Source of the DNA: Octopus sinensis
Taxonomy: Eukaryota
Assembly (NCBI RefSeq): GCF_006345805.1
Contig: NC_043009.1
Coordinates: 37,200,001-37,264,000, forward strand
DNA: 64,000 bases
Direction of reading: 5' to 3'
Under the pieces are notes generated by a model. It was not told where the DNA came from. It saw nothing but the letters and a program-made list of their open reading frames with translations, and did not search any database. The translations under genes were made by a program, and so were the position numbers. Positions 578 to 47,540 of this stretch are shown piece by piece. Position 1 is the first letter of the stretch. Each line of letters opens with the position of its first letter.

Positions 578-661
578 TTTGTGTTCTGAAGGATTCAGAC
601 ATTGCAAAGCATTGCAGAAATCCGTTGCAATCATACCTGCCGAACAGAGTCCCCAGCGCAT
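578..661 (-). CDS. DHDH: DHDH-like paralog A, coding exon 1 (rest of gene runs off the left edge)
   Basis: ATG then 28 codons MRWGLCSAGMIATDFCNALQCLNPSEHK followed by donor GTAAGT. 25/28 identical to exon 1 of copy B; resembles the N-terminal Rossmann strand of DHDH (MALRWG...). Confidence 0.9.
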
Positions 662-2130: not shown

Positions 2131-3080
2131 GAGCTAGTGAGAGTGTGGGACGTTGTCTTTCTTTTTCCCTCCGGCCGTTTTGTCTGCCTGTCTCTATGAT
2201 TCTAGTGGTCGGTCCACTAACTGATGCTAGCTCTCTCTCAACTCACGAATTTGTCACCAAGGTGACTAAATGATTTTTGCTTGGGGTGTGCTTGCTTATA
2301 TAAAGATCTAGAAGGATAGATAAATCATTGAGAACAATAGATTTAGTTGGTGGTCTTGTTATCTCTATTCTAGCTTTTGGTGAAGTAGAAGAGGTTAGAA
2401 AGGGTCAAGTGGTGAAGACATTATTTCGGCCTAGCTAAAGGATCTGGAAAATGTAAAACTGCCGTCAGAGAAAATCCATTGTTCCATCGTGGGAAAAGTT
2501 CTGTTGCAGTGTTAATTTAAATTTGGGTATGGTGGATCGAATCCACTTCATGCATCCAAGATTCACTACAGACGTATTGTTTGCTTACATTCTATTTGAA
2601 AAATATTTCTCTAAGGGCTTTGTTAGTTGGGAAGAAGTTGGAATATAAAGCCTGAAAGAATAACATTTATGTGAAAGGAAAATAAAGAAATAAAGATAAT
2701 CGTAATATCATAATTTTTTTCAGTTTCAAATTCAACTAAGACTATTATCACTAATACTGGGAACTTCTTATATTTTTTTTTTACATTCTGCCATTGAGTT
2801 TCTCTTTCGTTATCTTGAGATACTTTGAAAAGAATTTCCTCTTTTATATAAGATATTTTGGAGGTTAATGTCTATCTGAGCTGTACAGCTGGAGTATTAT
2901 TTTGGAGAAAAAACATGTGGATTTCAAGTTTGTGTGAAAAAGTGAGCACCAGAAGTAGAGTATATTTATTGTATGATCATTTGTTAGTCACTGATCTCAA
3001 AAACACTTTCAGATAACTAATCAATGTGATAAACAGGGATAGCTAATCTTTAAACCAGGTCCATTTTGTGTGTGCATGCG

Positions 3081-9233: not shown

Positions 9234-9317
9234 ATGCGCTGGGGACTATGTTCAGCAGGTTTAATTGCAAACGATTTCTGCAATGCTTTGCACTGTTTAA
9301 ATCCTTCAGAACATAAA
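9234..9317 (+). CDS. DHDH: DHDH-like paralog B exon 1
   Basis: MRWGLCSAGLIANDFCNALHCLNPSEHK then GTAAGT donor (phase 0). Not in the ORF track because it is short. Confidence 0.93.
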
Positions 9318-11487: not shown

Positions 11488-11599
11488 ATAACTGCAGTGG
11501 TATCCAAGTCTTTAGAGAAGGCTAAAAAATTAGCTGACGAATTTAAAATACCAAATGTGTATACCAGCTATGAAGAATTTGCCAAAGATCCCAACATAG
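11488..11599 (+). CDS. DHDH: DHDH-like paralog B exon 2
   Basis: tttag|ITAVVSKSLEKAKKLADEFKIPNVYTSYEEFAKDPNI+G|gtatga; 112 nt; matches DHDH ...IPKAYGSYEELAKDP. Confidence 0.93.
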
Positions 11600-12597: not shown

Positions 12598-12761
12598 ATC
12601 TGGTGTACCTTTCAACTGCAAACAGTTTTCATCACCCTCTTTCCATTCTTATGCTTAACAATGGTAAACCAGTTCTGTGTGAGAAAACCTGTGCTTGTAA
12701 CACGAAGCAGACACAAGAAATGATTGAACTTGCAAAGTCAAAGAAATTATTTTTCATGGAG
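12598..12761 (+). CDS. DHDH: DHDH-like paralog B exon 3
   Basis: cttag|(D)LVYLSTANSFHHPLSILMLNNGKPVLCEKTCACNTKQTQEMIELAKSKKLFFME|gtatgt; GKPVLCEK and LFFME family motifs; phase consistent with exon 2. Confidence 0.95.
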
Positions 12762-13305
12762 GTATGTCTTTTAATACTAAAATAGTGTATGTTGGTACGA
12801 TGTTGTTCTCTCTCCCTATATAATCCCTAATGAAGAAGACCCACAATCAAAATCTTTCCAGTCATAACCATCACGTCTTTTGATGGTTGTATTTGTTTAT
12901 GTAATACATTACCTGATATATCTTTCCTATCATAAGACCCTAGTGTAATTTAGTTTCTTTTTCTAGCAGACTGAGTAACTATGTAAAACAATGGTTCTCT
13001 GCTATTTTCCCCACATGCATTCTTTTCGCCATATTTCAAAATTCCACTTGCCACTTTGCAAATATTCTAAGTCAAAAATGTCATTCCTAATATGCTTATA
13101 ATAGTGAAAAATCGTTCTTTTTTTCAGAAGTATATACACATTAATTGAATTATTTCTGTGACTGAGTTTTTCAAATTTTACAGCTATAGAAAATGTTGAA
13201 ATTCAAATCTCAAAAAAAAAATAGGGTTTTTTTTTTTTGTCAAATACATAATTAATTTTCTTGAAGTGTATTTCAGTAAACAAAATGTTTAATAGTATCG
13301 TAGTG

Positions 13306-13506
13306 CAGTGGTTTTCAACCAGGGTTCCGCCAGCACAGTGCAGGGGTTCCGCAAGAAGTTACAAAAATGCTAAAATCGGCAGTAATTTTTAATTCTCCTG
13401 TGCAGATATGTGTGCATAAGACCATTAAATTATTGCACAGGGGTTCCTCGAGCCAATGGAATGTTTCCTTGGGGTTCCGCTCCAGCAAAAAGTTTGAAAA
13501 GCACTG
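13306..13506. mobile_element. hAT (Charlie-type) MITE, 201 bp
   Basis: TIRs CAGTGGTTTTCAA / TTGAAAAGCACTG; perfect 8-bp TSD TCGTAGTG (13298-13305, 13507-13514). Confidence 0.9.
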
Positions 13507-14624
13507 TCGTAGTGTATTATAGAACTTTATATATCAATTTATCATAAGATTAGTCTCTAAGAAACCTGTATCTGTTTATTTTATTTTCCCTTTTTCAATT
13601 GTAGTATAGATTGGAGGAATGCTTAAAAGGGAACAATGCATTCATTTTTTCTTTCCAGTTTACTTAATTTTTCATTCGAAACGGGGTTTAAAATCGTTGT
13701 TGACACGAATTAAAGCTACTCATTATATTGTTCTTTGTGTCACTGTCAGATAGGAGTCACACGTCAAGGACCAAAAGGTGGGGGATAGTGTTTTTTGTAT
13801 TGGTTTTGGCGTTGGTGGTGGTGTGGATGATGATAGACGTTTTTGGTGGTCGTCGTCGTATTGTTCTTGTTAAGTGTATTGTCGTCGTTTAATCTCGAGT
13901 CAGTTATTGATCGAAGATCAAAAAACATATCCTTGAACTTCTAAAGTACACTGGTACAACATTATCTCACGTGATTACCTTTTATTTTAGATGAAGTCGT
14001 TTATGTTGTTCATACGATTGTTGCTATTGTCGCCGATTATTAAGGAGTCGGTGGGTTGGTAATAGTAGAAGTTGTAAACGGACTTGATGCAATTTTTAAA
14101 TACTTAAAATTTATCCGACTTTCCGGAGCGGTGAAATTACAGAGCATATTCCCAAGTCAGTGGTTATGCTTCATAATTTCCGTATATGCGAATTTCCGAA
14201 ACCTGAGATTGTCGTAACACGGAGGATGTCTTTATATATTTAGTATAAACATGCGTTATCAATTTTTTAAAAAAATTGATAAGTGTGTTGAAAAGCTTTA
14301 CGTCTTCTTGCTCTGTTATATTGTGCATGGATGTCGACTCCATCATGAGTTGGAGTCGGCAACGATGTCGAAAGGCCGTACAGCAGACTCGATAGGCACA
14401 AAGATGAGGGAGATAGTAGTAAAATATTAAAGATCACAACTCGGGGATGTGTTTGTTTTAATGACTTTTTCCTACTTTTATTTAAATATATCTCATGATG
14501 TATTTCTTCCTACCTTAGTTTATATGTTCCTATCGTGTCTTTCTTTCTGCCTTACCCTTCGTTTTCATTTCTGACTTTATCTATATTTCTTTATAGTTTT
14601 GCTTTCGCGTTGTCATTCTTTCAG

Positions 14625-14874
14625 GCTTTGTGGTCCAACTTCTTCCCAGCTTACAAAGCCCTTAGAGAAATCATTGACTCTGGAACCATAGGAAAAATAC
14701 GCTACGTAGATGCAGCTCACTTTTACGACTTATTTTCACGTGATTTTGTATCACAGAAGTCTTTGGGTGGAGGAGGTCTCTTGTGTACTGCTGTGTATGT
14801 AATATGGCTTGCAAGATTTGTATTTAAACAGGATCCCGAAACTATTACTGCTGTTGGAACGATTGCTGACACAG
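14625..14874 (+). CDS. DHDH: DHDH-like paralog B exon 4
   Basis: ttcag|ALWSNFFPAY...SLGGGGLLCTAVYVIW...TIADT+G|gtaatt; 250 nt. Confidence 0.95.
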
Positions 14875-16935: not shown

Positions 16936-17060
16936 GTGTCGACCAATCTGGCAATATTATTCTGACTTATAAGGATGGTGCCAGGGCCTCTTTGTCTTAT
17001 AGCGTTGCTGTGAATGGAAGACGTGATGCATATATTTATGGAACCAAAGGCAAAATTTAT
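16936..17060 (+). CDS. DHDH: DHDH-like paralog B exon 5
   Basis: aaaag|(G)VDQSGNIILTYKDGARASLSYSVAVNGRRDAYIYGTKGKIY|gtaagt; 125 nt; matches DHDH GVDD...GTKG. Confidence 0.92.
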
Positions 17061-17303: not shown

Positions 17304-17454
17304 ATACATCCACCATTTTGGAGTGCCAGCAAAATTGAGGTGAATGGAGAAGAAAGAGAATTTCCACCCCCCAAGTCTGATGCGAAGTATAATTACCCCA
17401 ATAGCGCTGGATTAGCTTATGAGGCCGAAGATGTCCGTCTGTGTTTTGAGAAGG
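17304..17454 (+). CDS. DHDH: DHDH-like paralog B exon 6
   Basis: aaaag|IHPPFWSASKIEVNGEEREFPPPKSDAKYNYPNSAGLAYEAEDVRLCFEK+G|gtaagt; 151 nt. Confidence 0.93.
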
Positions 17455-19686: not shown

Positions 19687-19790
19687 GTCAGCTGGAATGT
19701 CCTGCTCACACTCATTCTGATACTTTGTCAATTATAAAAGTTATTGACGAGGTTCGACGACAACTCGAAGAGACGCATCAGAAAAATTAA
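19687..19790 (+). CDS. DHDH: DHDH-like paralog B exon 7 (terminal, TAA)
   Basis: ctaaag|(G)QLECPAHTHSDTLSIIKVIDEVRRQLEETHQKN*; the joined CDS gives an uninterrupted 329-aa protein. Confidence 0.92.
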
Positions 19791-31819: not shown

Positions 31820-31923
31820 TTAGTTCTTGTGTTGTGTCTCCTCAAGTTGTCGTCGAACCTCATCGATTATGTTTATAAGCAACAAACTATCAGCGTGGGT
31901 GTGATCGGGACATTCGAGATGAC
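31820..31923 (-). CDS. DHDH: DHDH-like paralog C exon 7 (terminal, TAA)
   Basis: ctaaaag|(G)HLECPDHTHADSLLLINIIDEVRRQLEETQHKN*; same length as B exon 7. Confidence 0.92.
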
Positions 31924-33310
31924 CTTTTAGAAAAAGAAGAGAGACAAACTTCAAATGATAGCAAAAACAAATATTGAAACGCACTAAAAAGAACAAGAAA
32001 AGACAATAAAATATTTAATTGCGTAACATAGACAAATACATATAAATATGATGTCATACAACGTAAATTCTTGAGTTATTAGAAAAATTCTCCGCCGCCT
32101 CTAAACGATGTGTCACAATTACCAATTGGCAATGAGAACCAGTTCCACTTGAGAAGGGGAGATAATCATAATAATCAAGTATTCTCCAAAGCGGAAATTC
32201 TATTAAGGAAAAAGACAAGCTTATTGTTTTAGTGATAAAAAGTTTTTATTTTACGCAATAGCAATCATTGGCATGACCATTGTTCGACCTACTTACATCT
32301 ACAGTAGCCAAGGGAATTAAACTTATACAAATAAAAGCAGAATACATTTATGGCCTGGGTGCTGTTTAATGTTGACAAAGAAGTTATCTTTCGACATATT
32401 AATTAGTTATCTGAAGAAACAGGAAGATAGAGGGCTGCAACAGTGTTTCTTTTTTTTCCATTCAGTCATGTGTATAGGAGAAAACAGATAAAAAAAGATA
32501 TAGTCGTATGTTTAATTATAAATGTAAACATGTAGCTATAAAAGAACAATAATACAACTCTATATTACAAACCAACGAAATAGTGACCACCTTTACAATG
32601 CTACTGTTATTGCTTTCCCTTCCTTTGCGTCCAATAACATTATACTTGTTCCACGTCCTCGTGTTGTTGTGTTTTCATGTCTGGATTAACTATATATATA
32701 AAATGCGAGTGAAGATGTGTACGTTTTCATAGTGACGTATAAGTACGCACGTGTGAGCGTATGACTAGACTATGAAATCTTAATCTTATTTTACATAAGT
32801 AGCAGAATTATAACACAGTAATCTCCCTTTATATAACGGTATTTTTTCATAGCGTTTTTTCAGATGGCCAGATAACCGAAGAGATGGTGTTGTGGATTTC
32901 CGCTTCGGCATCTGAAACTCAGTGTTTTATCTTGACTATTGAGTAATTGTAACATATTATTTTATATATATATACGCTGGACTGTATGAACATGTGCATG
33001 TGAGAACGTATTATTGTATGTCTATCTTTATGCCGGTATTGATGAGTGTACAAGAGCCATAACGATACGCGAAACAGACCCAGTGGAGCGTAGCACACCA
33101 TGTGTGACTCGTAATCAAGTTGTATCGCATCACTGGCCATTAAACGGTATCAACTTTATTAACACTTTTACAATGCTACTGTTATTGCTACATGTTATGA
33201 TGTGTGCGAGCGTATGTGTGTGCCTGTACGAGCATTTGTACGAGCGTATGTACGAGCGTATATATATATATATATATTGCTAAACCTCGCTAAGATAAAT
33301 ATTTCAATTA

Positions 33311-33377
33311 ACCTGAAGATTGACTGTAACCATAACTCGAATTATTACGAATTGTACAGCCATGAAACGATCGTAGT
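33311..33377 (+). ncRNA. Minimal hammerhead ribozyme-like motif (Penelope type)
   Basis: CUGAAGA - stem II (UGACUGUA/UACAGCCA) - GAAAC-GAUC-GUA; core intact, stem I only 2 bp. Confidence 0.5.
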
Positions 33378-33599
33378 GTTTTACTCTTTATCTTTTATTA
33401 AACTTTTAATACTTTTGATATATATTTAAAATAATATAAATTAATTAATTTTATGTATTGGCTTATGTTTTTCATTGTTTGATTTGCCTAATAGTGGTTT
33501 TATCTCTAATTTAATATAATATAATATAATATATTTTACTATAAAATTTGATTTAATCCTAAATCTGATTTTTCCCTCTAAGTTTGAGTTTATTCCCTA

Positions 33600-33654
<55 letters not shown>

Positions 33655-34297
33655 TTATAAATGTCTATCTACATACCTACAAACATACATGCTTACATAC
33701 ATACATACATCCACAAAAATAGGGATTCAAAGAATCAAACAAAGCACCGTGTGCGTGACATTCCGATAACTCATGGGCATGCTTTGACATGTACCTAATT
33801 ATCCGTACTATAACAAATACGATCTCATTTACAAGCTAAACCTCCACACTTTACTTTTTCTCTGTATATTTTTTATGGAATGTTTTCACTTATTTAAAAC
33901 CTGTGAGGATATTCAACCAAATCCTTGGGAAGCAAAACCTTATGATTATTTCATTATATAGTACTTTACTTCTTTTCTTTTTAGTTTTTGATTTTACAGT
34001 ATTTTCCCAGAAATTCTTTATATTTATCTAATTATCCTTGCTTTCTTAATACATTCCACATACAGTCATTATAGTTTTTGTAAGGGTTAAGTCTTCCAAA
34101 CACATCTATTGCCTGCTACTATAAATTGAGAAAATTTGCTAATTTACAGATCTGATATTTGAGTTGCCATGCTACGTCGTGATGTGAATCAGTTTATTAT
34201 GTTACAATACAATAATGTTCATAAGTATGCAAACGTACATACATACATATGCGCACACACGAACACATAATACATACATACATACATACATACATAC

Positions 34298-34612
34298 ACT
34301 CCGTCAGATATGACGACCAGGGTTCCAGTTGATCTGATTAACGGAACAACTAGCTCGTGAAATTAATGTGGCTGAGCACTCCACAGACACGCATATCCTT
34401 CACGTCGTTCTCAGGGAGATTCAGCGTGACACAGATGGTGACAAGATTGGCCCTTTGAAATACAGGTACTACGTATTTTTGACAACTGAGTGAAATGGAG
34501 CAACGTGAAATAAAATGTTTTGCGCAAAGACACAATGCGCCGCCGGAAATCGAAATCACGACCATACGATAGTGAGCCAAATACCCTAACCATTAAGTCA
34601 CGCGCCTTCACT
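34298..34612 (-). mobile_element. SINE type D (different head, type A tail)
   Basis: Shares GTATTTCAAAGGGCC...TGTGTCACGCTGAA...GGAGT tail with type A; head like 53840 copy. Confidence 0.8.
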
Positions 34613-34626
34613 ATGCATGTGTGCGT

Positions 34627-35293
34627 GTTTCCAATGTAGTTGTGTCCGCAACCCGAGCAGGTTATTACATAAATTAGGTTCTCAGAGGCACAAGTGAGAC
34701 TAGTTTTAATTGTGAACATCTATCCTTGTTTGAAAAAGAAATCCGAGCCTTGAGAAAGAGAACCACTCTACATAAATAGCAAATCCTTTTCCCGTAATAC
34801 AGTAAACATATAGAAAAATGTGCAGATAACATCAAACCAAATTTCACAGTCTTCCCCCTCTACTAGTGCAAAGACACAATCTCTCCACAAGAACGTTGAA
34901 AAATACAGAACACGTCTTAATATGCACGCATAACCAACTTTTTACATATTTCAATTCACGAATGCATCACTGAATATAAATCCCCTGACTATACAAGTTT
35001 TTCGAAACCTTTTTGTCTGTACATATATATTCCCCTCCCATAACCGAAAACTGAACAGTTATCTCCCTTGCCCACAACTATAACAATAATGACGATATCC
35101 AATTACCTCCCCTTATTTTTCTACTTGTGAAGTCATTCACTCGTAAAGTCATTCACACGACGTGGACAAAATTTCTTCTTAAGAAAATACTTATTCAAAT
35201 AAGTAACACATAATATGAATAGCGATAGCGAAACCGGTCGATATATCAAAAATTATATTAAAACTATGTAAAGTGTATTTTCCTTTTTTACTT

Positions 35294-35369
<76 letters not shown>

Positions 35370-35560
35370 ACTTATAAACAAGAGCAAAAGAAAAAGTTTC
35401 TAATGCTATATATGCCGAAAATAGACTTAAATCGTCAATAACCATATAATTCAAGTGCAAGTAAGTATCTCATTTATTTCTTATCGTATTTATCGCTGAC
35501 GACGAGAAAATTCTATCAATTAACTCAGAAATCGGGTCTGATTCGATAATAACGGAATTT
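34627..35560. mobile_element. Penelope-like element 3' end with inverted GIY-YIG segment
   Basis: Minus 34627-34740 reads FTIKTSLTCASENLIYVITCSGCGHNYIGNT. Plus 34745-34930 continues LRKRTTLHK...KHIEKCADNIKPNFTVFPLY. The downstream UTR carries hammerhead-like motifs. Confidence 0.75.
35485..35554 (+). ncRNA. Type I hammerhead ribozyme-like motif
   Basis: Stem I UUAUCG/CGAUAA; CUGACGA; stem II GAG..CUC; GAAA; stem III AUCG/UGAU; AUU cleavage triplet; C.A mismatch at base of stem II. Confidence 0.55.
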
Positions 35561-35852
35561 TTTAGAAATTTCTGTCGGCTTGCTTCGCGATGCGTGCTTA
35601 TAGTGATGTATTATATAGTTATTGACGATTTAAGTCTATTTTCGGCATATTTGGCATTAGAATTTTTTTTCTTTTGTCATTGTTTATAAGTTGTTTATAA
35701 ATTTAACCTTTAAAGATCCTTTTTTTAATATGCTAGCCATTGATAAAATTTTCATAAATTGTTTTATATACAGCACACAGCTTGACATAAAAACAAACAT
35801 TAATACGTGTGTATTTATCCACCTGTATCAATATGTATATATATATATATAG

Positions 35853-35889
<37 letters not shown>

Positions 35890-36619
35890 CGTGTGTGTAT
35901 GTATGTGTGTGTATGTGTGTGTGTATGTGTGTGTATGTATGTATGTATGTATGTTTGTATGTATGTTTGTATGTATGTAAAGAAAAACACACACACACAT
36001 GTATTTAATATACATATATGTATTTATGTGTATATATATAGAGAGAGAGAGTGGGAGAGGGAGATAGATAGATATACACTGGTATATGTGTTATGCATAT
36101 TTACATAAGTGTGTGCACGTATGCATGCATATATACATGTAAATATTTATATCTATATAACTATATATAGTACAACGAGGGCAGTCAGGCGGAAACTTCG
36201 ACGTCACTTTCAACCTTCTGCTATAAAGTTAAATACACATGTAATGTAGTAAAAATGTAATTTTTCACTTTGATGATAAATTGTTTTATATACAGCACAC
36301 AGCTTGACATAAAAAACAAACATTAATACGTGTGTATTTATCCACCTGTATCAATACGTATATACATATATATATAGCTATATGTTTTTTGTGTTTTTGT
36401 TTTCACGATTCTTGTGAAACTATTGAAACAGATATCGATGTATTTTGGCGAAGGATTCTGTCATGATTTTAGTTCCTTGCTTTTTACTAAGTAATACATT
36501 AATTTGTCATTGTCACCCACATCGATTCTGTAGCTTTTTTAATCTATTCACTGAGAATGTTTGTCTCCTGCTATATTATTGATAATGGCGGTGGTGGTGA
36601 TTGTGGTGTTGACTCTATG

Positions 36620-37099
<480 letters not shown>

Positions 37100-37802
37100 T
37101 GTCATGATAGGGGAGAGTTCATTTGTATGTTGTGTATGCCTTATATTTTAGGCTTTTTATTGTTCTGTCAGCTCCAATAGGCTCTATATATATAGTGGTG
37201 ATAGCCATTAGTATAGATGCATTGACACAGGAATGGAAATAAGATATATCAAATCTACACATAAATGAATAGATGCTCACCACCATAAAGATACACCATC
37301 TCTGCAATCATACGCATCACACAAGAACATGACCACCACTGCCGCTAACATTTATCATCATTACAACTTTTAATACCGCCATCACCACCATCACCACCAC
37401 CATTACCATCATGGTCATTAGGACCACCACCACCACCACTAACTCCATCCACATACATGTCCCCCACCACCACCACCACAATATATCAAGTCCAGTCCAA
37501 ACACTAGAATAAGCAATCACAGAGAGCTCATTGAGAAGGCTACAGATGCGTGGTGAAAGATTTTGAGAAATGAATAATTAAAGGAATGTAAAACATACAC
37601 ACACACATACACACATACCCATACACAAACACACACACACACACACACACACACCACACACACACACACACACACACGCACACACACACACACACATATA
37701 TATATAACGGGAAGCTTTATGAAAATAAACAAAAGACGAAGGCAGGTGGAGTACAAACAAACAATTGTATTAGTATGGTGCTCAGGAATATAAATAAAAC
37801 AA

Positions 37803-37841
37803 GTCTTTTACGTTTCGAGCCTACGCTCTTTAACAGAAAGA
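37803..37841 (-). ncRNA. Degenerate minimal hammerhead-like motif
   Basis: UCUUU-CUGUUAA-A-GAGC(GUAG)GCUC-GAAAC-GUA-AAAGA; stems intact, two core substitutions. Confidence 0.5.
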
Positions 37842-37965
37842 TACACAGAAAAGAAACACGGAGAGAAACAAGGAGAGAAAAAAATGCGTGCAGAAGCTAG
37901 CGATTCAACCTATATATATATAATATATATACATATATATATATATATATTATATATATAATATA

Positions 37966-38000
<35 letters not shown>

Positions 38001-38349
38001 ATATATATATAATATATATATATGACAAGTTTCTTTACGAAATCCAACTTACAAGATGTTGGTAATAAATATTTTTCCAAGGTGTTGTTGCGTAGTAGTA
38101 TTGAACTAGGAACCATGTGGTAGCATAGCGAACTTCTTAACCAAATAACCAAACCTGTCTCCACCCGGTACAGAGTTTATGACAAGATAAGAACCACTAA
38201 CGTCTTGGCGGATTGTCTGGTACAATAGGGAATCGACCTTCCGTGAGCAATGAAAATTAGTACCAGCTAATAAAAGGGAATAGCACAGTAGTAACAGATT
38301 GCGTCACTGGTTACGCCCACATACGTCATACATAATTACAACAACAACA

Positions 38350-38380
<31 letters not shown>

Positions 38381-38444
38381 TTATTATTCACATATATATG
38401 ATAGGCATTTCATTATAAAGTCTCAGAAGTTATCGAAGACTTAC

Positions 38445-38595
38445 CCTTCTCAAAATACTGACGGACATCTTCAGCCTCATAAGCCAACCCGTTGCTATGG
38501 ACGTAAGTATATTTAGCATCAGATTTGGGAAGCGGAAACTCTCTTTCTTCTCCATTCACCGCGATTTTATCCGGACACCAGAATGGTGGATGTAT
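38445..38595 (-). CDS. DHDH: DHDH-like paralog C exon 6
   Basis: ttacag|IHPPFWCPDKIAVNGEEREFPLPKSDAKYTYVHSNGLAYEAEDVRQYFEK+G|gtaagt. Confidence 0.93.
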
Positions 38596-38624
38596 CTGTA
38601 AAAAGAAACTAGTGTCTTTTATGC

Positions 38625-38948
38625 ATTAAACGATAAACAATAAACTTCGCCCTTTTCATGCCTAGCCAGGCTCATGGGCTCAGTTTCCTGGTTTCTGTGG
38701 CGTATATGTTCCCCCCAGCTGGACGGGACGCCAGTCCATCGCAGCGTTACTAAAGAAACAGGAAGAGAGAGTGAGAGAAAGTTGTGGCGAAAGAGTACAA
38801 CAGAGGTCGCCACCACCCACTGCCGGAGCATCGTGGAGCTTTTAGGTGTTTTCGGTCAATAAACACACTCAACGCCCGGTCTAGGAATCGAAACCGCGAT
38901 CCTCCGATCGCGAGTCTGCTGCCCGAACCACTGGGCCATTGCGCCTCC
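38625..38948 (-). mobile_element. SINE type E (type A head + V-domain-like tail)
   Basis: Type A head followed by GATGGACTGGCGTCCCGTCCAG, resembling the V-SINE central domain; lies 30 bp from the DHDH-C exon 6 acceptor. Confidence 0.75.
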
Positions 38949-39169
38949 CCTTTTATGCATGAAGACAATTTTTAGTTTGTTTATTTTAATTTTCTTTAAT
39001 ATTAATGTTATAAATGTTAGATTTAGTACAATAAATTAACCATTCAATAAATTTACTAAATTTTAAGTTTAGTACAACAGATTTGAATGTCATCCACTTT
39101 ATTTCTAGATTAACAAACATTAAGTTACATTTCCAAAAATATTTATCTCTAAATCAAAGGATTACTTAC

Positions 39170-39294
39170 GTAAATTTTGCCTTCAGTTCCATAAATATAT
39201 GCATCAGTTCTTCCTGCCAACGTAGTATTAAAGGACAATGAAGCTCTGGCACCATCCTTATAAGTCAGAATGATATTGGCAGATAGATCAGTAC
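39170..39294 (-). CDS. DHDH: DHDH-like paralog C exon 5
   Basis: gaaaag|(G)TDLSANIILTYKDGARASLSFNTTLAGRTDAYIYGTEGKIY|gtaagt. Confidence 0.93.
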
Positions 39295-39419
39295 CTTTTC
39301 CAGATGAAACAAGTAAACACATTTTCTTATTGGTTATTGTCACGCACAGACTGGCGTAATGCGGTGAGCTCGAAAACACGACTACTTTTGTTGGCATTTG
39401 AACAAAAACATACGTATAT

Positions 39420-39425
39420 ACTTAC

Positions 39426-39456
<31 letters not shown>

Positions 39457-39653
39457 CATACATACATACATACATACATACATACATACATACATACATA
39501 CATACATACATACATACATACATACATACATACATACATACGTACATACATGAGGATATGGAGCTTGCAAATCCAGTACTCAAGATTCAGTTTCAACTTC
39601 ATACCTATTATTATTATTATTATTATATTATTATTATTATTATTATTATTATT

Positions 39654-39748
<95 letters not shown>

Positions 39749-39800
39749 CATTATTATTATTATATTATTATTATATTATTATTATTATTATTATTATTAC
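39420..39800 (+). repeat. (CATA)n and (TTA)n(TCA)n(TTA)n arrays
   Basis: Direct reading. Confidence 0.95.
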
Positions 39801-39849
39801 TGGAGCAACAAGATACATACCAACCCGTCTAGAGCAAAGTATGGCCGAA

Positions 39850-40760
39850 CTTGCGATCTCGGGGAGAGAATAAAAATCTTTAATTCATATGCTACAAATG
39901 ATCACGATATCTGGGACTATAAAAATCTGCAAGACCTTCTTATGATTTAAAGGGTGTATTTAAACGAAGAAATTACGAATAACGAGTACTGCACTTCTAA
40001 AAACGCGAATAAATGCCTATTTATATGCATGCAAATAGGTGACGAATTTCCTCTTAGATTAAATTATCCGTAGTTAGATCCTTTCTAAACTGAACTTTAA
40101 AATCTCTCTCAACCAAAGAAGTTCTAAATAAGGAAACCCTATGTGTAAAACTAACATTAGTAAATAGTGAGTATCCCAATAGGTTAGTAGATCAAGCCAT
40201 TGAATAATAACAAAACAAATTCAATCACACTGTTATAAGAGACAGAGGACTGAACAAAAGTCCCTATACCATGCATATCGCATGCCGCCACAAGATTTGA
40301 AGAAGCAGCTGTTTGTAGCATGTTGAACAATCTTGTAGAGATCCCCTTGTTGGCTTTTAAATAATTTTTCTTAGTGGAAGCTCTGGTTCTTTCTTCAGCT
40401 ATTTTTATTGTTGCAGAGGAATTATACTTGTTTGGAAAGAATTTTATCTGATATTGTGTATTGAAACAAATTTATGACGTTGTAAGAAATCTGCAATCTG
40501 GCTAGAGAAAATAACTCTTCGAGTATTTCATTGGAATATATTTTCTCTTGGTCATGTTGTAGATATATAATGAATGTCTTTGACACTGGTGCAAAATAAA
40601 ACAAATATCGGTGTAACGTTATCCGTAGGATTTGAATGGCTGCCATAATCCTATTGCTATGCAATTCTTTTATATAACATTCACCAAAAGTATTGTGACT
40701 TTAAGTAGATGCCAGCATGTTATCCGAAACTCTAAAGTATGTAGTTGCGTTTCATTTTTT
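39850..40760. mobile_element. Two decayed Penelope RT fragments (plus 39850-40230, minus 40270-40760)
   Basis: TLVNSEYPNRLVDQAI (+); RYLFYF...FSLAR...TISD (-); both resemble the PLE RT-thumb/linker region. Confidence 0.45.
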
Positions 40761-41052
40761 CCTATATTGACATGTATTTATTGATCAGCAATGATAAATT
40801 TGTTGAATTTGCTGCTTATTAAAGAATGTTGGGTCCTAGCATTGAAAACTCAGAAAAATGGTTTCTTGGACATTATTTATATCTTCTACTGGTTATCTTC
40901 TACTAGGTTATTTTCCTATGCCTCTAGGCACAAAAACATTAACAATTGAATAATGTGACAAAATTATAGAAAATAGAACTGTCAGTAAAATTATTAAAAT
41001 CCCTAGAATAGGTATACAAGCAACAAGAAACCTTTATTAATGACACGCTTAC

Positions 41053-41302
41053 CTGTTCCAGCAATTGTACCACAAGCAGTAATAGTTTCAGGTTTCTGTC
41101 TAAATATGAAGTTTGCAAGCCATATTGTATATACACCAATTTCCAACAGACCTCCACCACCCACGGAGCCTCGAGATATCTCTTCTTTTGAAAATATATC
41201 AACTAAGAAAGCCACATCTAAATAGCGTATCTTTCCTATGGTTCCAGAGTCGATTTCTTGCTTAATATTTTTGTAAGCCGGAAAGAAGTTGGACCACATA
41301 GC
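41053..41302 (-). CDS. DHDH: DHDH-like paralog C exon 4
   Basis: ttttag|AMWSNFFPAY...SVGGGGLLEIGVYTIW...TIAGT+G|gtaagc; 250 nt. Confidence 0.95.
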
Positions 41303-41838
41303 CTAAAATGAAAAGATTTATGTGAAAGGAGAAAAAGAGCAATAAAGCGATAAAGATAGCTCGGGATAAATAAAAACGAAGAAAAAGGAATAAAAAAAAT
41401 AAGATATAAATAAAAGCGGTAAGAAAGACATAATAAACGATATATTTATTAGTTACTTCATGTGTTATGACCTCCAATATCTTCCCTAACTTCCAGCTTA
41501 TTAAGTTTACTGCACATCCTTTCAACATACTATGCAGCATTTTTAGCGATGAAATTCCTCACTAACTATAGAATTCTATTTTAGTACACGCCACAATCAA
41601 TATCATAAAACACTCCATTCACTATTTTGAGTGCGAAAAGGGCTGGGAATTGGTAGAAATATTAAAACGTCGGGAAAATACTCTGCAAGTTTCTTCACAT
41701 TTTACTTCATCTCCCAAACGTAATTTTATTTCAGCCCAACGCACCGGTTACAGAGCCCCAATTCAGTCACATGACTGGCTTGAAACAGAAGCAAAATCGC
41801 TCACAATCACACCCTATCACCATAAAAAAGTAAGGATA

Positions 41839-42232
41839 GGCGCAGTAGTGGCTGTGTGGTAAGTAGCTTGCTTACCAACCACATGGTTCCGGGTTCAGTC
41901 CCACTGCGTGGCATCTTGGGCAAGTGTCTTCAACTATAGCCTCGGGCCAACCAAAGCCTTGTGAGTGGATTTGGTAGACGGAAACTGAAAGAAGCCCGTC
42001 GTATATATGTATGTATATATATGTTTGTGTGTCTGTGTTTGTCCCCCTGGCATTGCTTGACAACCGATGCTGGTGTGTTTACGTCCTCGTCACTTAGCGG
42101 TTCGGCAAAAAAGACCGATGGAATAAGTACTGGGCTTACAAAGAATAAGTCCTGGGGTCGATTTGCTCGACTAAAGGCGGTGCTCCAGCATGGCCGCAGT
42201 CAAATGACTGAAACAAGTAAAAGAGTAAAGAG
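41839..42232 (+). mobile_element. SINE type B, full length
   Basis: Family consensus head and tail. Confidence 0.9.
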
Positions 42233-42249
42233 TATACAATCGATAATGT

Positions 42250-42565
42250 AGTCTTAATGGTTAGGGATATTCGGTTCGCGATTGTAAGCTCGTGAGTTCG
42301 ATTCCTGGCGGGGCCTTGTGTGTATTGAGTAAGACGCCACCTTATTTCACATAGCTCCTTTCCACTTAGCTGGCAAAAATTAGTAGTACCTTTATTTCGA
42401 AGGACCAGTCTCGTTACATTCTGTGTCACGCTTAATCTCCCAAAGAACTACGTTAAGGGCACGTGTGTTTATGGAGTGCTCAACCACTCACACATAAATT
42501 CCACAAGGAGGTTGTTCTTGTGTCCGGATCAACTGGACCGGTCGTCATCGCAACCGGCAGAGTGC
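42250..42565 (+). mobile_element. SINE type D, older
   Basis: Head TAATGGTTAGGG...GAGTTCGATTCC; type A-like tail. Confidence 0.75.
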
Positions 42566-42706
42566 TAGCTATAACCATCTATAAAATATAACAGAAAAGG
42601 TCAAGGTCGGGAAGATTTTGATCATGGATCTACTCCATTAAGGCTGATGTGGGGCGAAACAACGAAACTATGTCAAAATACTTAACTTTAGTATTAAAAG
42701 ACATAC

Positions 42707-42870
42707 CTCCATGAAAAAAATTTTCTTTGACTTTGCAAGTTCGATAATGTCTTTTGTCTCCTTTGTGTTCTGACCGTAGGCTTTCTCACACAGAACAGGC
42801 TTGCCATTGTTAAGCATAATGACGGAAAGAGGATGATGGAAACGGTTGATGGAAGAAACGTACACCAAAT
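42707..42870 (-). CDS. DHDH: DHDH-like paralog C exon 3
   Basis: catag|(D)LVYVSSINRFHHPLSVIMLNNGKPVLCEKAYGQNTKETKDIIELAKSKKIFFME|gtatgt; 164 nt. Confidence 0.95.
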
Positions 42871-42945
42871 CTATGGGAAAGATGGAATAAAATTCATTTT
42901 TTCTTGCTACCAAAGCAATACATATAAGTGTGTTTGTGTGTGTGT

Positions 42946-43023
<78 letters not shown>

Positions 43024-43319
43024 CTTTCTTCCAAGGAATCTAGCGCTCTTAGCTTAGTTTTTCCTTGGGGCTGGCCAGATTGGAGCAATCTCGAGAGTAT
43101 AACCAGCCGAAATTGCAAAGATAATTTGGAACTCGACTGAGGAAAGAAATCTCCGAGTGACCCGTCCTTGTTTTCTCCCCCTTTTTGTATCACCTGTCTG
43201 GATGTATTGCGTTCTTGTCACATTTTTGTATTTTATATGTGTGTGTGTGTGTATTTATGTATGTATGTATGTATGTACATGTATATATGTATGTGAATAA
43301 TTATATACATACATATACA

Positions 43320-43370
<51 letters not shown>

Positions 43371-43840
43371 TAAAGCTATAAGGAATAGCATGCAAATATT
43401 GCATTGGAAAGCCGGTGGGTCTCGAACCTACATCATCTATAGATGGAGAGATGTTCTAAAATTGGTCCAAAGCAATCCTTACAATATCTCTATACAGTTG
43501 AGTAACTTTATTATTACCAATGCCAATTATGTTGTTGATGTCAACAATTTCATAAAGTTTTCTGAGAACAGTGATTGGAGAAGTTCATGACATACAGCTA
43601 TAAAGAATAGCAAGCAAAGATTCAGTTAAAAAAACTGTTTTGAGTAAAAAGAAATCGAAATGTTGCTTTGGTCCAATGATAGAAAATCTTTCATGTCAAC
43701 AGGAGATATGGGTTAGAGCCCCACAGGCAGTATTTGATTTTTTTATATCCAAAGAGTTTTTCACCCTAATTTTAACGTGCTATTCTTTACAGATGATGAG
43801 CTTCGAGAGCCACTATTGCAAAATTCATATGACATCAACA

Positions 43841-43928
<88 letters not shown>

Positions 43929-44841
43929 AAATTTATATACATACGAACACACAACTAAATATACATTTATATAGATTGTTAGGTAGGTAGGTGTGTGTGT
44001 GTGTCTGTGTTTGTGTTTCCATGCGTGAGTTGTTTTACTTTTCTCTCATGAAAACTCTCCCTTCTGCTACTCAACTCTAAAGAATCAGATCTTATCATTG
44101 CTCAATGAAGTCAGCTAGCACGCATTGCTTAGGAAAGCAAAACAACGATAGCTGTATGATCAATGTAGCAGTTAGATCAGTAGTTATGTGCTTCAACATT
44201 AAATTATCTGGAATTGTTCACTCAGAGGTAAACTTAAATTGATAATTTTCTAAGCTTATATTGAAGCAAATCTGTCGTGAGGTATTGTCAAAAATAGAAA
44301 CACCGACACAATAGACAAACATTGTTCATTGTCCTCAGTTATTTATTATTTGGCCATAGAGATCATATTTCAGAAAAATATAAAAATATGAACGGCTAAT
44401 AACAAAGAACACTATTTCTCAGCTGAACCATTTTACATTCAACAGGATTGTGAGTAGATATATTAATACTTTGCGAAGATCAAATATATCAAACTGGACA
44501 GTCTTTTGAAGCAAAAATAAAGCCGTTTTGTCATTATCGGCTGATTTTGCCATGGAAAGGGACCAACTGTGAAGACTGACCAGTATTATATACTCGGCAT
44601 TTCCTTTGTTGCGGAAATTGAAGAGGATATCGAAGAGGCCTCTGTGTAGTGTGCGTGTATGTATGTATGCATGTATGTATGTATATATGTATGTATGTAT
44701 GTATGCATGCATGTATGTATGTATGCATGTATGTATGTATATATGTATGTATGTATGTATGCATGTATGTATGTATGTATGTATGTATGTATGTGTGTAC
44801 GTATGTACGTATGTATGTATGTATGTATGTATGCATGTATG

Positions 44842-45217
44842 TCACTATTCAGCTTCATTTCAAGATTTCGTGTCGATAGAGAAAAAGCTGGTATCTAACC
44901 TAGACCCAAGGCTCCTTGGAATTTCAACAATATCAACAAGATATTTTTGCATGTATATGTGTATAAGTGCAGTATTTAGAGTCCGTGTATGTGCAGATTT
45001 GTATGTTTTGTTTTATGCGTGTATTCTCATGCATATAGTTGCATGTCTGGACATGCGCATATATACTTAAATGATAAACTTCTGGAAAGTTTTACAGATT
45101 TTTACAGTTCCAGTTATGACCTGGATCTGTACAATTCGAATCAACTTTCTCCTTTTGAGAAGCCTTTTTTCTCAAGATTGGTACTTAGGAAGTGCGTTAC
45201 ACATCCCGGTGCTTCAT
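44842..45217 (-). mobile_element. 5'-truncated REL LINE flanked on both sides by (CATA)n
   Basis: Homologous to 55680-55790 (GYVTHCLNTNLEKLGFSK region) plus 3' UTR; (TATG)n at 44655-44841 and 45218-45270. Confidence 0.75.
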
Positions 45218-45285
45218 ATGTATGTATGTATGTATGTATGTGTATGTATGTATGTATGTATGTATGTGCATGGATGTATGCGTGA

Positions 45286-45445
<160 letters not shown>

Positions 45446-45469
45446 TAATAATAATAATAACAATAATGG

Positions 45470-45738
45470 CTTCAAATTTTGGCAGATGGCCAGTAATTTG
45501 GAAGTCCTACCTCCGCCAAAATTTTGGGGAAGGGGCTAGTAGATTACATCTACTCCAGTGCTCTAGTGGTACTTATTTTATCGACCCCGAGGTATGAAAG
45601 GCAAAGTCGAACTCAGAGGAATTAGAACTAAGAGAGAAAAGACGGACGAACTGCTGCTAAGCATTTTCCCCGGCGTGCTAACGACTCTGCCAGTTCGCCG
45701 CCTTAGTAATAATAATAATAATAATGATGATGATAATG

Positions 45739-45796
<58 letters not shown>

Positions 45797-45985
45797 CAGC
45801 AATTTTCGCGGGTGAGAGAAGTTAATCAATACCATCGAATCAAGTATTTGGCCAGTCTTATCAATCTGGAAAGTATGAAAGGCGAAATTGATCTGCAGGA
45901 TTTGAACTCAGAACGTAAGACGCTGGAACACTTGCCGCAAGACATTTTTTACGATACGTAAACGATTCTGCTAACTCGCAGCTTT
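45470..45985 (-). mobile_element. Two tandem type C SINEs with expanded (TTA)n tails
   Basis: Copies at 45470-45703 and 45796-45985; the (TAA)/(TGA) arrays at 45286-45465 and 45705-45795 abut their 3' ends. Confidence 0.8.
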
Positions 45986-46020
45986 TATTAAATTCTAATT
46001 CTTAAAGCGTGGAAACCACT

Positions 46021-46155
46021 CCTAAACGTGTGTTTTGCTCATGGCAGCATCCTTGTAAGCTGTTTGAAGCATGACAACCGTTTCGGCTGCCGTTTTCCTC
46101 AGCAGAAAACAGAATTTCACGGAAGCACGCTGTTCCTTCGTTTCAGGCATCGCAA
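46021..46155 (-). mobile_element. mariner N-terminal fragment
   Basis: EQRASVKFCFLLRKTAAETVVMLQTAYKDAAMSKT. Confidence 0.75.
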
Positions 46156-46959: not shown

Positions 46960-47540
46960 TTTCGTTGATTTTCTTGCATTTCATTCAAACAAATATCTTG
47001 AAGATATGTTCGAACTTATTACCGACGTGAATCTAACAACCTGCTGACACAGATAGTTACCAACTTATCAGTAATGCTGTTAAAATAAAGTACATGCTCT
47101 TGTCACTCAATGTAGCCATCACGATCCCCTCCATAGATGAAAATGTGTCTATCCTGCGAGAGATTTTATCCACGAAGAATACATTTGGGAAATTCTCATG
47201 GAGAACAATCTTAAGGAAGACACACAAAAAGGAAGAACTTATAGTAATGTCAATGACCACCTCAAATCTGCAATATTCGATTTAGCAGCTTCCTGGAAGG
47301 CACTCAAGACTGTCACTCAAGCTAAAAACTTTCCGTATGATTTTGATGGATCTGAGACAAAGGATTTTCATCGTATGTTTCAGAGTGAAGGTGAAACAGG
47401 TATTACATACGATGGCGTTAGAATCTGGATTGAAGTCGCAGAGGGTGGCACAGGATACCAAGCGTTAACAGGAGAAATAGCGGAAGAAGTTCTCGTTGGT
47501 GACAGCAGAGCTGATGAGGATGATGACGAAAACAAAATAT
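46960..47540 (+). mobile_element. Tigger/Jerky-like (pogo) transposase C-terminal remnant
   Basis: LKSAIFDLAASW, DFDGSETKDFH, GYQALT.EIAEEV and acidic tail DEDDDE. Confidence 0.55.

What the first reader, a model, noticed from the sequence alone, without database searches (positions are those of the whole stretch)
12598..14874. DHDH-B is intact but has lost the catalytic Asp (to Cys) and the EKP proline
Seen: CEKT-CACN instead of CEKP; GGGGLLCTAVY instead of GGALLDIGIY; WSNFFP instead of WTRFFP. The reading frame and splice sites are all intact. Established (recalled numbering): Lys97, Asp176, Tyr180 and His79 form the active site of mammalian dimeric DHDH, and EKP is a Gfo/Idh/MocA hallmark. 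Lys, Tyr and His equivalents (K95, Y178, H77) are kept. Asp176 becomes Cys174, with two further Cys right after the Lys. Inference: altered chemistry or substrate, redox or metal sensitivity, or a pseudo-enzyme/structural role. Cephalopods have recruited GST and ALDH as lens crystallins, so a similar recruitment is a hypothesis to test.
Basis: partly seen in the sequence, partly recalled or inferred. Interest (0 to 1): 0.7.

Follow-up and report, generated by a model that had tools for sequence, protein, structure and literature searches.

The report
Octopus DHDH paralog with cysteine active site
This is an intact, evolutionarily conserved octopus copy of the sugar/dihydrodiol dehydrogenase DHDH in which a normally catalytic aspartate is a cysteine; it belongs to a small octopus-specific gene family that shares this change, so it probably has an altered job rather than being broken, but nothing about it is yet tested at the bench.

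Summary
Window 12598-14874 holds exons 3 and 4 of a seven-exon, 329-aa gene (9234-19790, + strand) with GT-AG at every intron. It is identical to RefSeq XP_029644133.1 of Octopus sinensis.

Aligned to monkey dimeric DHDH (PDB 2O48), His79, Lys97 and Tyr180 are kept. Pro98 is Thr96 and Asp176 is Cys174. Cys97 and Cys99 follow the lysine.

These are not assembly errors. The same codons occur in the O. bimaculoides and O. vulgaris orthologs and in further paralogs.

It is not a decaying pseudogene. dN/dS against the O. bimaculoides ortholog is 0.18 (p = 2e-8). It shows no rate acceleration against an Asp-keeping paralog. The AlphaFold model has pLDDT 97.6 and TM 0.94 to 2O48.

EKT and WSN are shared by nearly all octopod DHDH paralogs, Argonauta included. 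About 19% of 252 close DHDH-like proteins lack the Asp. What marks this subfamily is the Cys174, Cys99 and Gly176→Ala/Ser combination.

Most likely it is an NADP(H)-binding DHDH paralog with a remodelled substrate and proton-relay site, arising from an Octopus tandem expansion. Activity, expression and the lens-crystallin idea remain untested. Interest is moderate to low.

The parts
9234..9317 (+). DHDH-B exon 1. Starts at the ATG and encodes MRWGLCSAGLIANDFCNALHCLNPSEHK, the first strand and glycine-rich turn of the Rossmann fold.
   Evidence: donor GTAAGT
11488..11599 (+). DHDH-B exon 2 (ITAVVSKSLEKAKK...DPNI, ends in phase 1).
   Evidence: AG/GT boundaries
12598..12761 (+). DHDH-B exon 3. 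Carries H77 (12630-12632) and C93-E94-K95-T96-C97-A98-C99 (12678-12698), i.e. the EKP motif reading EKT followed by C-A-C.
14625..14874 (+). DHDH-B exon 4. Carries W123-S-N125 (14631-14639), GGGGLL-C174 (TGT 14784-14786), T175, A176 (14790-14792) and Y178 (14796-14798).
16936..17060 (+). DHDH-B exon 5 (..VDQSGNIILTYKDGARASL...GTKGKIY).
17304..17454 (+). DHDH-B exon 6 (IHPPFWSASKIEVNGEEREFPPPKSDAKYNYPNSAGLAYEAEDVRLCFEK).
19687..19790 (+). DHDH-B exon 7 with the TAA stop (..QLECPAHTHSDTLSIIKVIDEVRRQLEETHQKN*).
578..661 (-). Exon 1 of the divergently transcribed neighbour, XP_036364211.1 (P0290, 333 aa). It is another Cys-type paralog (CEKTCACN, GGGGLLCSTVY). The rest of the gene lies beyond the left edge of the window.
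31820..57389 (-). Paralog 'M' (identical to O. sinensis P0030), exons 2-7: 57389-57278, 42870-42707, 41302-41053, 39294-39170, 38595-38445, 31923-31820. Its motifs are CEKAYGQN and GGGGLLEIGVY (Asp→Glu). Exon 1 lies about 4.6 kb beyond the right edge of the window.
2604..2666 (-). Relic of an exon 4 (acceptor plus about 50 nt, ALYSNFFPTNKALREIF followed by a stop), roughly 2 kb upstream of the neighbour's exon 1. It is debris of the tandem duplications.

Best explanation
DHDH-B is a functional, selectively maintained paralog of dimeric dihydrodiol/D-xylose dehydrogenase (Gfo/Idh/MocA family). It arose in an Octopus-specific tandem expansion.

**What is kept.** It keeps the Rossmann NADP(H)-binding scaffold and the Glu-Lys, His and Tyr catalytic residues.

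**What has changed.** The substrate and proton-relay side of the pocket has been rebuilt: Asp176→Cys174, Gly178→Ala176, Cys99 added, and His152 and Phe161 at otherwise conserved pocket or loop positions.

**Most likely function (inferred, not shown).** It still binds NADP(H) and acts as an oxidoreductase whose substrate range and kinetics differ from canonical DHDH. The ancestral activity would be covered by sister paralogs that keep the Asp.

**Shown here:** gene structure, residue mapping, cross-species conservation, purifying selection, fold.
**Inferred:** cofactor binding, residual catalysis, changed substrate.
For: - **Gene and family.** Intact 7-exon gene with GT-AG introns. Pfam PF01408 at 3.9e-21 and PF22725 at 1.4e-23. 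Best solved relative is monkey DHDH 2o48, E = 1.5e-20 on two exons.
- **Fold.** AF2 model has pLDDT 97.6 and pTM 0.94. Foldseek top hit is 2o48, with TM 0.94 and rmsd 1.3 Å over 320 columns.
- **Residue conservation.** H77, E94, K95 and Y178 fall in columns that are invariant across a 93-sequence family alignment.
- **Cross-species conservation.** C174, T96, C97 and C99 use identical codons in O. sinensis, O. bimaculoides and an O. vulgaris paralog locus. The Cys is shared by P0286, P0287, P0026, P0027, P0290, P0291 and P0292.
- **Purifying selection.** dN/dS is 0.18 against the O. bimaculoides ortholog (dS 0.14, Fisher p = 2e-8). It is 0.20 against the Cys-type paralog (dS 0.37).
- **No rate acceleration.** Tajima relative-rate test against the Asp-keeping paralog with Argonauta as outgroup gives 28 vs 28 unique changes. 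The ortholog pair is 94.8% identical, against 85.4% for the Asp-type pair.
- **Pattern of divergence.** Differences between Cys-type paralogs cluster at residues 144-190, 226-230 and 247-254. That pattern is expected for diverging ligand pockets.
- **Phylogeny.** Octopod paralogs are monophyletic, with Asp, Glu and Cys types side by side.
Against: - No biochemical or expression evidence for this gene was reachable.
- In a related family member the homologous Asp→Ala mutant lost activity (PMC5969746). A Cys here could therefore leave the protein catalytically dead.
- The nearly invariant Gly176 is also lost, and 9 of 52 family-conserved columns deviate, which puts DHDH-B in the top 10% of deviants.
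- Purifying selection shows that the protein matters. It does not show that it catalyses anything.
- The roles I assign to Asp176 and Tyr180 in mammalian DHDH rest on recalled literature that could not be retrieved.
Confidence: 0.5

Rival explanations
1. Pseudoenzyme or binding protein. The fold, and perhaps NADP(H) or ligand binding, are retained but hydride-transfer catalysis is lost. The protein would serve a non-catalytic role such as a ligand or cofactor buffer, a regulator, or an abundant structural protein like a lens crystallin.
For: - The conserved Asp of the K-D-H/Y relay is gone, together with the neighbouring Gly and the EKP proline.
- D→A abolishes activity in scyllo-inositol dehydrogenase (PMC5969746).
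- The family has precedents for non-catalytic members: GFOD1, which lacks cofactor binding, and GFOD2, which has EKA (PMC11612644).
- Strong purifying selection is compatible with a non-enzymatic function.
Against: - Lys, Glu, His, Tyr and the Rossmann glycine positions are all kept, unlike GFOD1.
- The DHDH subfamily uses Tyr rather than His as the acid/base partner, and that Tyr is intact.
- Nothing links this gene to lens. The known cephalopod crystallins are GST- and ALDH-derived (my own knowledge).
- Multiple Cys-type paralogs diverge mainly in pocket loops. That looks more like substrate diversification than scaffold use.
Confidence: 0.27
2. Thiol-based chemistry or regulation. Cys174, possibly together with Cys97, Cys99 and Cys93, forms a new functional thiol site beside the nicotinamide. 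It could be a covalent thiohemiacetal-type nucleophile, a redox switch or disulfide, or a metal site.
For: - Cys174 and Cys99 arose together. Both are conserved in all full-length Cys-type genes except P0293, which has Gly at 174.
- Cys at this column is almost unique. Among 252 homologs only 3 have it, and 2 of those are octopus.
- In family structures the homologous Asp side chain points at the Lys (PMC5969746). A thiol there would therefore sit in the catalytic centre.
- Asp→Cys needs two nucleotide changes (GAY→TGY), so it is not a trivial drift step.
Against:
- The co-occurrence of C99 and C174 reflects a single ancestral event, so it is not independent evidence.
- One subfamily member replaced the Cys by Gly (P0293), and another is truncated (P0001).
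- I know of no precedent for covalent Cys catalysis in Gfo/Idh/MocA enzymes.
Confidence: 0.15
3. Decaying duplicate or annotation and assembly artefact. The substitutions would reflect relaxed constraint in a redundant tandem copy on its way to pseudogenisation, or wrong bases in the assembly.
For: - The cluster does contain debris and broken copies. There is an exon 4 relic at 2666-2604.
- A truncated Cys-type copy, P0001, is broken inside exon 4 at a second locus.
- One copy has Lys→Gln (CEQT) and a frameshifted exon 4.
Against: - dN/dS is 0.18-0.20, significantly below 1.
- All exons and splice sites are conserved in length in three species.
- The key codons are identical across species.
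- There is no rate acceleration.
- The fold is predicted with high confidence.
Confidence: 0.04

Closest known systems
Mammalian dimeric dihydrodiol dehydrogenase / D-xylose 1-dehydrogenase (DHDH; monkey enzyme, PDB 2O48, 2O4U, 2POQ, 3OHS)
   Same: - Same family and same predicted fold: TM 0.94, rmsd 1.3 Å, 37% identity.
- Same length class (329 vs 334 aa).
- His79, Glu96-Lys97 and Tyr180 equivalents are present.
- Same two Pfam domains.
   Different: - Pro98→Thr, Asp176→Cys, Gly178→Ala and Arg127→Asn.
- Cys at +2 and +4 after the Lys.
- It is one of about 10 paralogs in two clusters on one octopus chromosome, rather than a single-copy gene.
Other octopod DHDH paralogs: Asp-type P0029 and P0031, Glu-type P0028 and P0030, Argonauta P0032
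   Same: - 68-79% identical, with the same exon structure.
- They share the octopod-wide EKT/EKA, R35K and WSN changes.
- They lie in the same tandem clusters.
   Different: They carry Asp or Glu at position 174, Gly at 176, and no Cys99. DHDH-B and its Cys-type relatives alone have C99 with C174 and A/S176.
GFOD1/GFOD2, the human Gfo/Idh/MocA pseudoenzymes (PMC11612644)
   Same: They are animal members of the same superfamily with a degenerate EKP motif (GFOD2 EKA, GFOD1 DRT), proposed to have non-catalytic roles.
   Different: GFOD1 lacks the cofactor-binding residues, whereas DHDH-B keeps them. The sequence relationship is distant (PDB 8y7p, E = 2e-4).
Inositol and scyllo-inositol dehydrogenases and 1,5-anhydro-D-fructose reductase (K-D-H triad enzymes)
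   Same: They share the fold and the Lys of EKP. The Asp aligned to C174 is part of their catalytic triad, and its Ala mutant is inactive (PMC5969746).
   Different: They use His where DHDH uses Tyr, and they are only about 20% identical. DHDH-B lacks the Asp.

Membership tests
Gfo/Idh/MocA oxidoreductase superfamily | N-terminal NAD(P)-binding Rossmann domain (PF01408) plus C-terminal alpha/beta domain (PF22725 / PF02894) | tested here: met
   PF01408 at 76.4 bits (cut-off 24), PF22725 at 83.6 bits (cut-off 27), PF02894 at 32.2 bits (cut-off 22.9). The AF2 model matches more than 500 PDB family chains.
Gfo/Idh/MocA oxidoreductase superfamily | Consensus GxxVxCEKP motif, with Glu binding the nicotinamide carboxamide, a catalytic Lys, and Pro | tested here: not met
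   The motif reads GKPVLCEKT. Glu and Lys are present, but Pro is Thr. Pro is present in 217 of 252 close homologs, and Thr in 10, of which 6 are octopod. The substitution is shared by nearly all octopod paralogs.
Gfo/Idh/MocA oxidoreductase superfamily | Conserved Asp four residues before the His/Tyr acid-base residue (K-D-H/Y relay) | tested here: not met
   The position is Cys174. Asp is present in 203 of 252 homologs. D191A is inactive in scyllo-inositol dehydrogenase (PMC5969746).
Dimeric dihydrodiol dehydrogenase (DHDH) orthogroup | Closest sequence and structure relative is DHDH, and the gene groups with animal DHDHs | tested here: met
   2o48 is the best PDB hit by sequence and by fold. 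The nearest non-octopod proteins are animal DHDHs at 40-49% identity. The NJ tree places the octopod clade beside decapodiform DHDH.
Dimeric dihydrodiol dehydrogenase (DHDH) orthogroup | Active-site set His79, Lys97, Asp176, Tyr180 (residue roles recalled from the monkey enzyme literature) | tested here: not met
   Three of four are present (H77, K95, Y178). Asp176 is Cys174.
Dimeric dihydrodiol dehydrogenase (DHDH) orthogroup | NADP+-dependent oxidation of trans-dihydrodiols or D-xylose, and homodimer formation | not testable with these tools
   Needs recombinant protein. Only the monomer was modelled.
Cephalopod lens crystallins (recruited enzymes) | Very high, lens-preferred expression | not testable with these tools
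   No expression data were reachable. Literature searches found only an ink proteome, and it contains a different paralog, A0A6P7T245.
Processed or unprocessed pseudogene | Disrupted frame or splice sites, or dN/dS near 1 | tested here: not met
   The ORF is intact with GT-AG introns. dN/dS is 0.18, p = 2e-8.

The most novel reading that the evidence does not exclude
The Cys-type DHDHs (C-E-K-T-C-A-C plus Cys174) could be an Octopus-specific invention of a new active site on the Gfo/Idh/MocA scaffold. A thiol placed next to the nicotinamide and the catalytic Lys/Tyr could give covalent chemistry (thiohemiacetal or thioester, aldehyde-dehydrogenase-like) or redox- or metal-gated chemistry. This could relate to quinone, catechol or melanin-type metabolites, which cephalopods handle in quantity. 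A sister paralog is present in ink.
Probability: 0.1. Interest if true: 0.65.

Novelty: new variant of a known kind. Interest (0 to 1): 0.33.

Why it matters
If the Cys-type proteins are active, they would show that the Gfo/Idh/MocA K-D-Y relay tolerates or exploits a thiol. That would also point to an octopus-specific metabolic specialisation created by tandem duplication: about 10 DHDH-like genes, against one to three in the other animal genomes I am aware of (my impression; not counted here).

If they are inactive, they would be a second animal example, after GFOD1/2, of a conserved pseudoenzyme in this family.

Either way the result is of local interest to enzymologists and to cephalopod genomics. 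It does not bear on a long-standing open question. The gene is already annotated by homology in RefSeq.

Tried and rejected
1. **Wrong orthology at first.** I first took the O. sinensis locus L001 (protein P0001, 188 aa, broken inside exon 4) and the O. vulgaris locus L003 (P0027) as orthologs. From that I provisionally concluded that O. sinensis had lost the gene.
   - One search showed the window protein is itself O. sinensis XP_029644133.1.
   - Searches place the window at CM016871.1, about 37.20-37.26 Mb.
   - L001 and L003 are a second, paralogous cluster at about 55.85 Mb. The 'loss' conclusion was withdrawn.
   - The window-P0027 dN/dS of 0.20 is therefore a paralog comparison. The ortholog comparison is with O. 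bimaculoides L002.
2. **Pseudogene or assembly error.** Rejected.
3. **Literature searches.** They also found no open text on the monkey DHDH active-site mutants. The family review PMC4941211 is not held.
4. **Cys-Cys distances.** These could not be measured, because the predicted model's coordinates are not exposed to scripts.
5. **RNA and repeat scans.** Rfam over the whole window gave no hits. The intron between exons 3 and 4 has no direct or inverted repeats of 18 nt or more.
6. **Transcript contigs.** I found no contigs carrying the exact protein. Each ortholog is recorded on its genome contig only.
7. **Unused search.** The exon 3+4 query had already returned Logan genomic fragments of other paralog types only.
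Full report
**What is at the coordinates**

The window is AT-rich, repeat-laden animal DNA. The interval 12598-14874 spans two coding exons and the 1.86-kb intron between them.
- Exon 3 (12598-12761) translates to (D)LVYLSTANSFHHPLSILMLNNGKPVLCEKTCACNTKQTQEMIELAKSKKLFFME.
- Exon 4 (14625-14874) translates to ALWSNFFPAYKALREIIDSGTIGKIRYVDAAHFYDLFSRDFVSQKSLGGGGLLCTAVYVIWLARFVFKQDPETITAVGTIADT.

I located the remaining exons by tblastn with homologs and by tblastx between the two paralogs in the window. The full model is 9234-9317, 11488-11599, 12598-12761, 14625-14874, 16936-17060, 17304-17454 and 19687-19790. Every intron is GT-AG, the phases are consistent, and the 990-nt ORF ends in TAA.

The 329-aa product is an exact match to XP_029644133.1, 'trans-1,2-dihydrobenzene-1,2-diol dehydrogenase [Octopus sinensis]'. 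Window 28820-64000 is 100% identical to O. sinensis CM016871.1 around 37.23-37.26 Mb. The window is therefore CM016871.1:37,200,001-37,264,000.

**The residue claims**

A phmmer alignment of the two exons to PDB puts monkey dimeric DHDH (2o48) first, at E = 1.5e-20. It maps the residues as follows:
- H77 to His79
- K95 to Lys97
- T96 to Pro98
- C174 to Asp176
- Y178 to Tyr180

C97 and C99 follow the lysine.

**Family membership and fold**

Pfam finds the Gfo/Idh/MocA Rossmann domain and both C-terminal domain models above their cut-offs. An AlphaFold2 model built on a 93-sequence alignment has mean pLDDT 97.6 and pTM 0.94, with no low-confidence segment. Its best structural match is 2o48, with TM 0.94 and rmsd 1.3 Å over 320 columns. 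The protein is confidently predicted to adopt the DHDH fold.

**Are the substitutions real and old?**

Yes. The O. bimaculoides ortholog locus (L002) has all seven exons with identical lengths and GT-AG boundaries, and 93-97% exon nucleotide identity. The codons for H77, C93, E94, K95, T96, C97, A98, C99, C174 and Y178 are identical in O. sinensis, O. bimaculoides and an O. vulgaris Cys-type locus. The O. vulgaris ortholog protein P0287 is 99% identical and has the same motifs.

**Is the gene under constraint?**

Nei-Gojobori dN/dS is 0.18 against O. bimaculoides (dS 0.14; 19 nonsynonymous vs 27 synonymous differences; Fisher p = 2e-8). It is 0.20 against the Cys-type paralog P0027 of O. vulgaris (dS 0.37; p = 5e-16).

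A Tajima relative-rate test against an Asp-keeping paralog, with Argonauta as outgroup, gives 28 vs 28 lineage-specific changes. The sinensis-bimaculoides protein identity is 94.8% for this gene. For the Asp-type pair it is 85.4%, if that pair is orthologous. This is not a decaying duplicate.

**Genomic context: a tandem expansion**

The window holds three DHDH genes.
1. **DHDH-B**, on the + strand.
2. **A divergently transcribed neighbour.** Its exon 1 is at 661-578 on the − strand. This is XP_036364211.1 (P0290), also Cys-type. The two start codons are 8.6 kb apart, separated by transposon remnants.
3. **Paralog 'M'**, on the − strand (exons 2-7 from 57389 to 31820). It is identical to P0030 and has CEKAYGQN and GGGGLLEIGVY. 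Its exon 1 lies about 4.6 kb past the right edge.

A short exon 4 relic sits at 2666-2604.

A second cluster at about 55.85 Mb on the same chromosome (L001, orthologous to O. vulgaris L003) holds more copies:
- a 337-aa gene;
- a Cys-type copy truncated inside exon 4 (P0001);
- a copy with CEQT (Lys→Gln) and a frameshifted exon 4.

I initially mistook this second cluster for the ortholog and thought O. sinensis had lost the gene. One search corrected that.

**How unusual are the changes?**

I aligned 252 close DHDH-like proteins, taken from the two large searches.

| Position | Commonest residue | Other residues |
|---|---|---|
| EKP proline | Pro in 217 | Ala 14, Thr 10 (6 octopod), Ser 9 |
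| Asp176 equivalent | Asp in 203 | Ala 11, Glu 10, Asn 5, Gly 4, Cys 3, Tyr 3, Leu 3, others |
| WxR arginine | Arg in 217 | Asn 9 |

Two of the three Cys cases are octopus. The third also lacks the Lys. Non-Asp variants are therefore found in about 19% of close homologs, for example in amphioxus, a frog, Littorina and cuttlefish (Tyr).

Within octopods, EKT (or EKA), R35K and WSN are shared by nearly all paralogs, including Argonauta. They predate the Octopus expansion and coexist with Asp in some paralogs. Specific to the Cys-type clade are C99, C174 and A/S176.

Against 52 columns that are at least 80% conserved in non-octopod homologs, DHDH-B deviates at 9: I5L, R35K, F43L, P96T, R125N, R161F, D174C, G176A and G323E. 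Only 24 of 245 other sequences deviate as much. The deviations concentrate around the active site. The cofactor-binding glycines and Glu94/Lys95 are intact.

**Phylogeny**

An NJ tree places all octopod sequences in one clade next to decapodiform DHDHs. Argonauta branches outside an Octopus radiation into at least five groups:
- Cys-type
- CEQT-type
- Asp-type
- Glu-type X4
- EKA/Glu-type M

The Cys-type group includes P0286, P0287 and P0026 (orthologs of this gene). It also includes P0027, P0290, P0291, P0292 and P0293. P0291 has regained EKP while keeping Cys, and P0293 has Gly instead of Cys.

**What the Asp does elsewhere**

In scyllo-inositol dehydrogenase the EKP Lys and the homologous Asp are described as conserved across the family. 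They are part of a K-D-H triad and water-mediated proton relay, and the K, D and H alanine mutants lose activity (PMC5969746). GFOD1 is a family pseudoenzyme, and GFOD2 carries EKA (PMC11612644). An uncharacterised solved member, 3e9m, has Gly at this column.

The specific roles of His79, Lys97, Asp176 and Tyr180 in monkey DHDH rest on my recollection of the primary literature. I could not retrieve it.

**Interpretation**

My estimates for the competing readings are:

| Reading | Probability |
|---|---|
| Conserved NADP(H)-binding DHDH paralog with a remodelled substrate and proton-relay site, still an oxidoreductase with altered specificity or kinetics | about 0.5 |
| Non-catalytic binding protein or pseudoenzyme, including the crystallin idea | about 0.27 |
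| New thiol-based chemistry or regulation | about 0.15 |
| Decay or artefact | about 0.04 |

Arguments for retained catalysis:
- Every cofactor-side residue and the Tyr/His/Lys set are conserved.
- Sequence differences among Cys-type paralogs cluster in pocket loops (144-190, 226-230, 247-254).

Arguments against:
- The Asp is important in related enzymes.
- The neighbouring invariant Gly is also lost.

**Expression**

No transcript or tissue data for this gene were reachable. The only relevant paper is an O. vulgaris ink proteome. It identifies a different paralog, A0A6P7T245 (LOC115218668, 337 aa, with three unique peptides), which corresponds to the 337-aa gene of the second cluster. The lens-crystallin hypothesis therefore remains untested.

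**Verdict**

This is a new active-site variant, a small Octopus-specific subfamily, of a known enzyme family. It is already annotated by homology and is of moderate to low general interest (0.33).

Noticed in passing
window 1-64000 with loci L001, L003, L004, L005: Octopus carries a sizeable lineage-specific DHDH expansion. Three genes touch this window. A second cluster at about 55.85 Mb on the same chromosome holds at least three more, including a truncated copy (P0001) and a Lys→Gln (CEQT) frameshifted copy. Catalytic-position states vary between copies: Asp, Glu, Cys or Gly at 174, and EKT, EKA, EKP or EQT at the motif.
   Followed up: partly
L001:1-5677 (O. sinensis, second cluster); PMC10142993 supplement: The 337-aa paralog A0A6P7T245 (LOC115218668) was detected by shotgun proteomics in octopus ink, with 3 unique peptides. 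This is the only protein-level evidence found for any octopus DHDH paralog. It hints at a link to ink or melanin (catechol/quinone) metabolism.
   Followed up: partly
window 4802-8374: Transposon remnants lie between the two divergently oriented DHDH genes. On the − strand there are pogo/Tigger-like ORFs (DDE_1 at 6847-7638, HTH_psq at 7586-8374, and a Cys/His-rich ORF at 6593-6898). On the + strand there is a mariner-like HTH_48 fragment at 4802-5140.
   Followed up: partly
window 25063-25956 (+): A non-LTR retrotransposon fragment: long ORFs with a weak zf-RVT match. It is 81% identical to a copy inside the intron of the paralogous gene in L001, at 10723-11647.
   Followed up: no
window about 11650-12080, with copies near 3046-3430, 41836-42250, 51500-52030, 54270-54460 and 59790-59940: A dispersed short repeat, roughly 400 bp and 80-90% identical between copies, ends in a sequence that looks tRNA-derived to me (..GGGACTGAACCCGGAACCATGTGGTTGG..). 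I suspect a SINE family, and it also occurs in L001 and L004. Rfam gave no hit at gathering threshold.
   Followed up: no
window 15955-16330; 8640-8870; 4220-4444; 18540-18920; 38620-38950; 58880-59240: A second dispersed repeat family carries a conserved ORF-like stretch (..SSTRLRQGMVVIPAVLFHHNFLSLLLPVSVVPVFQRAGLVTLCVTLNIPENYVKGTRVCGVLSHLHVNFTSRLFR..). It is present on both strands in several introns and intergenic regions.
   Followed up: no
window 30400-62200 (many sites, e.g. 39400-39870, 44570-45470, 61390-62150): Dense microsatellites and low-complexity tracts, such as (TATG/CATA)n, (AAT)n, (GA)n and (CA)n, fill the 14-kb intron 2 of paralog M and its surroundings.
   Followed up: no
P0034 and P0035 (Acanthosepion pharaonis DHDH): Cuttlefish DHDH keeps EKP but has Tyr at the Asp176 position (GGGGLLYIGIY). 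This is an independent loss of the Asp in another cephalopod lineage.
   Followed up: no
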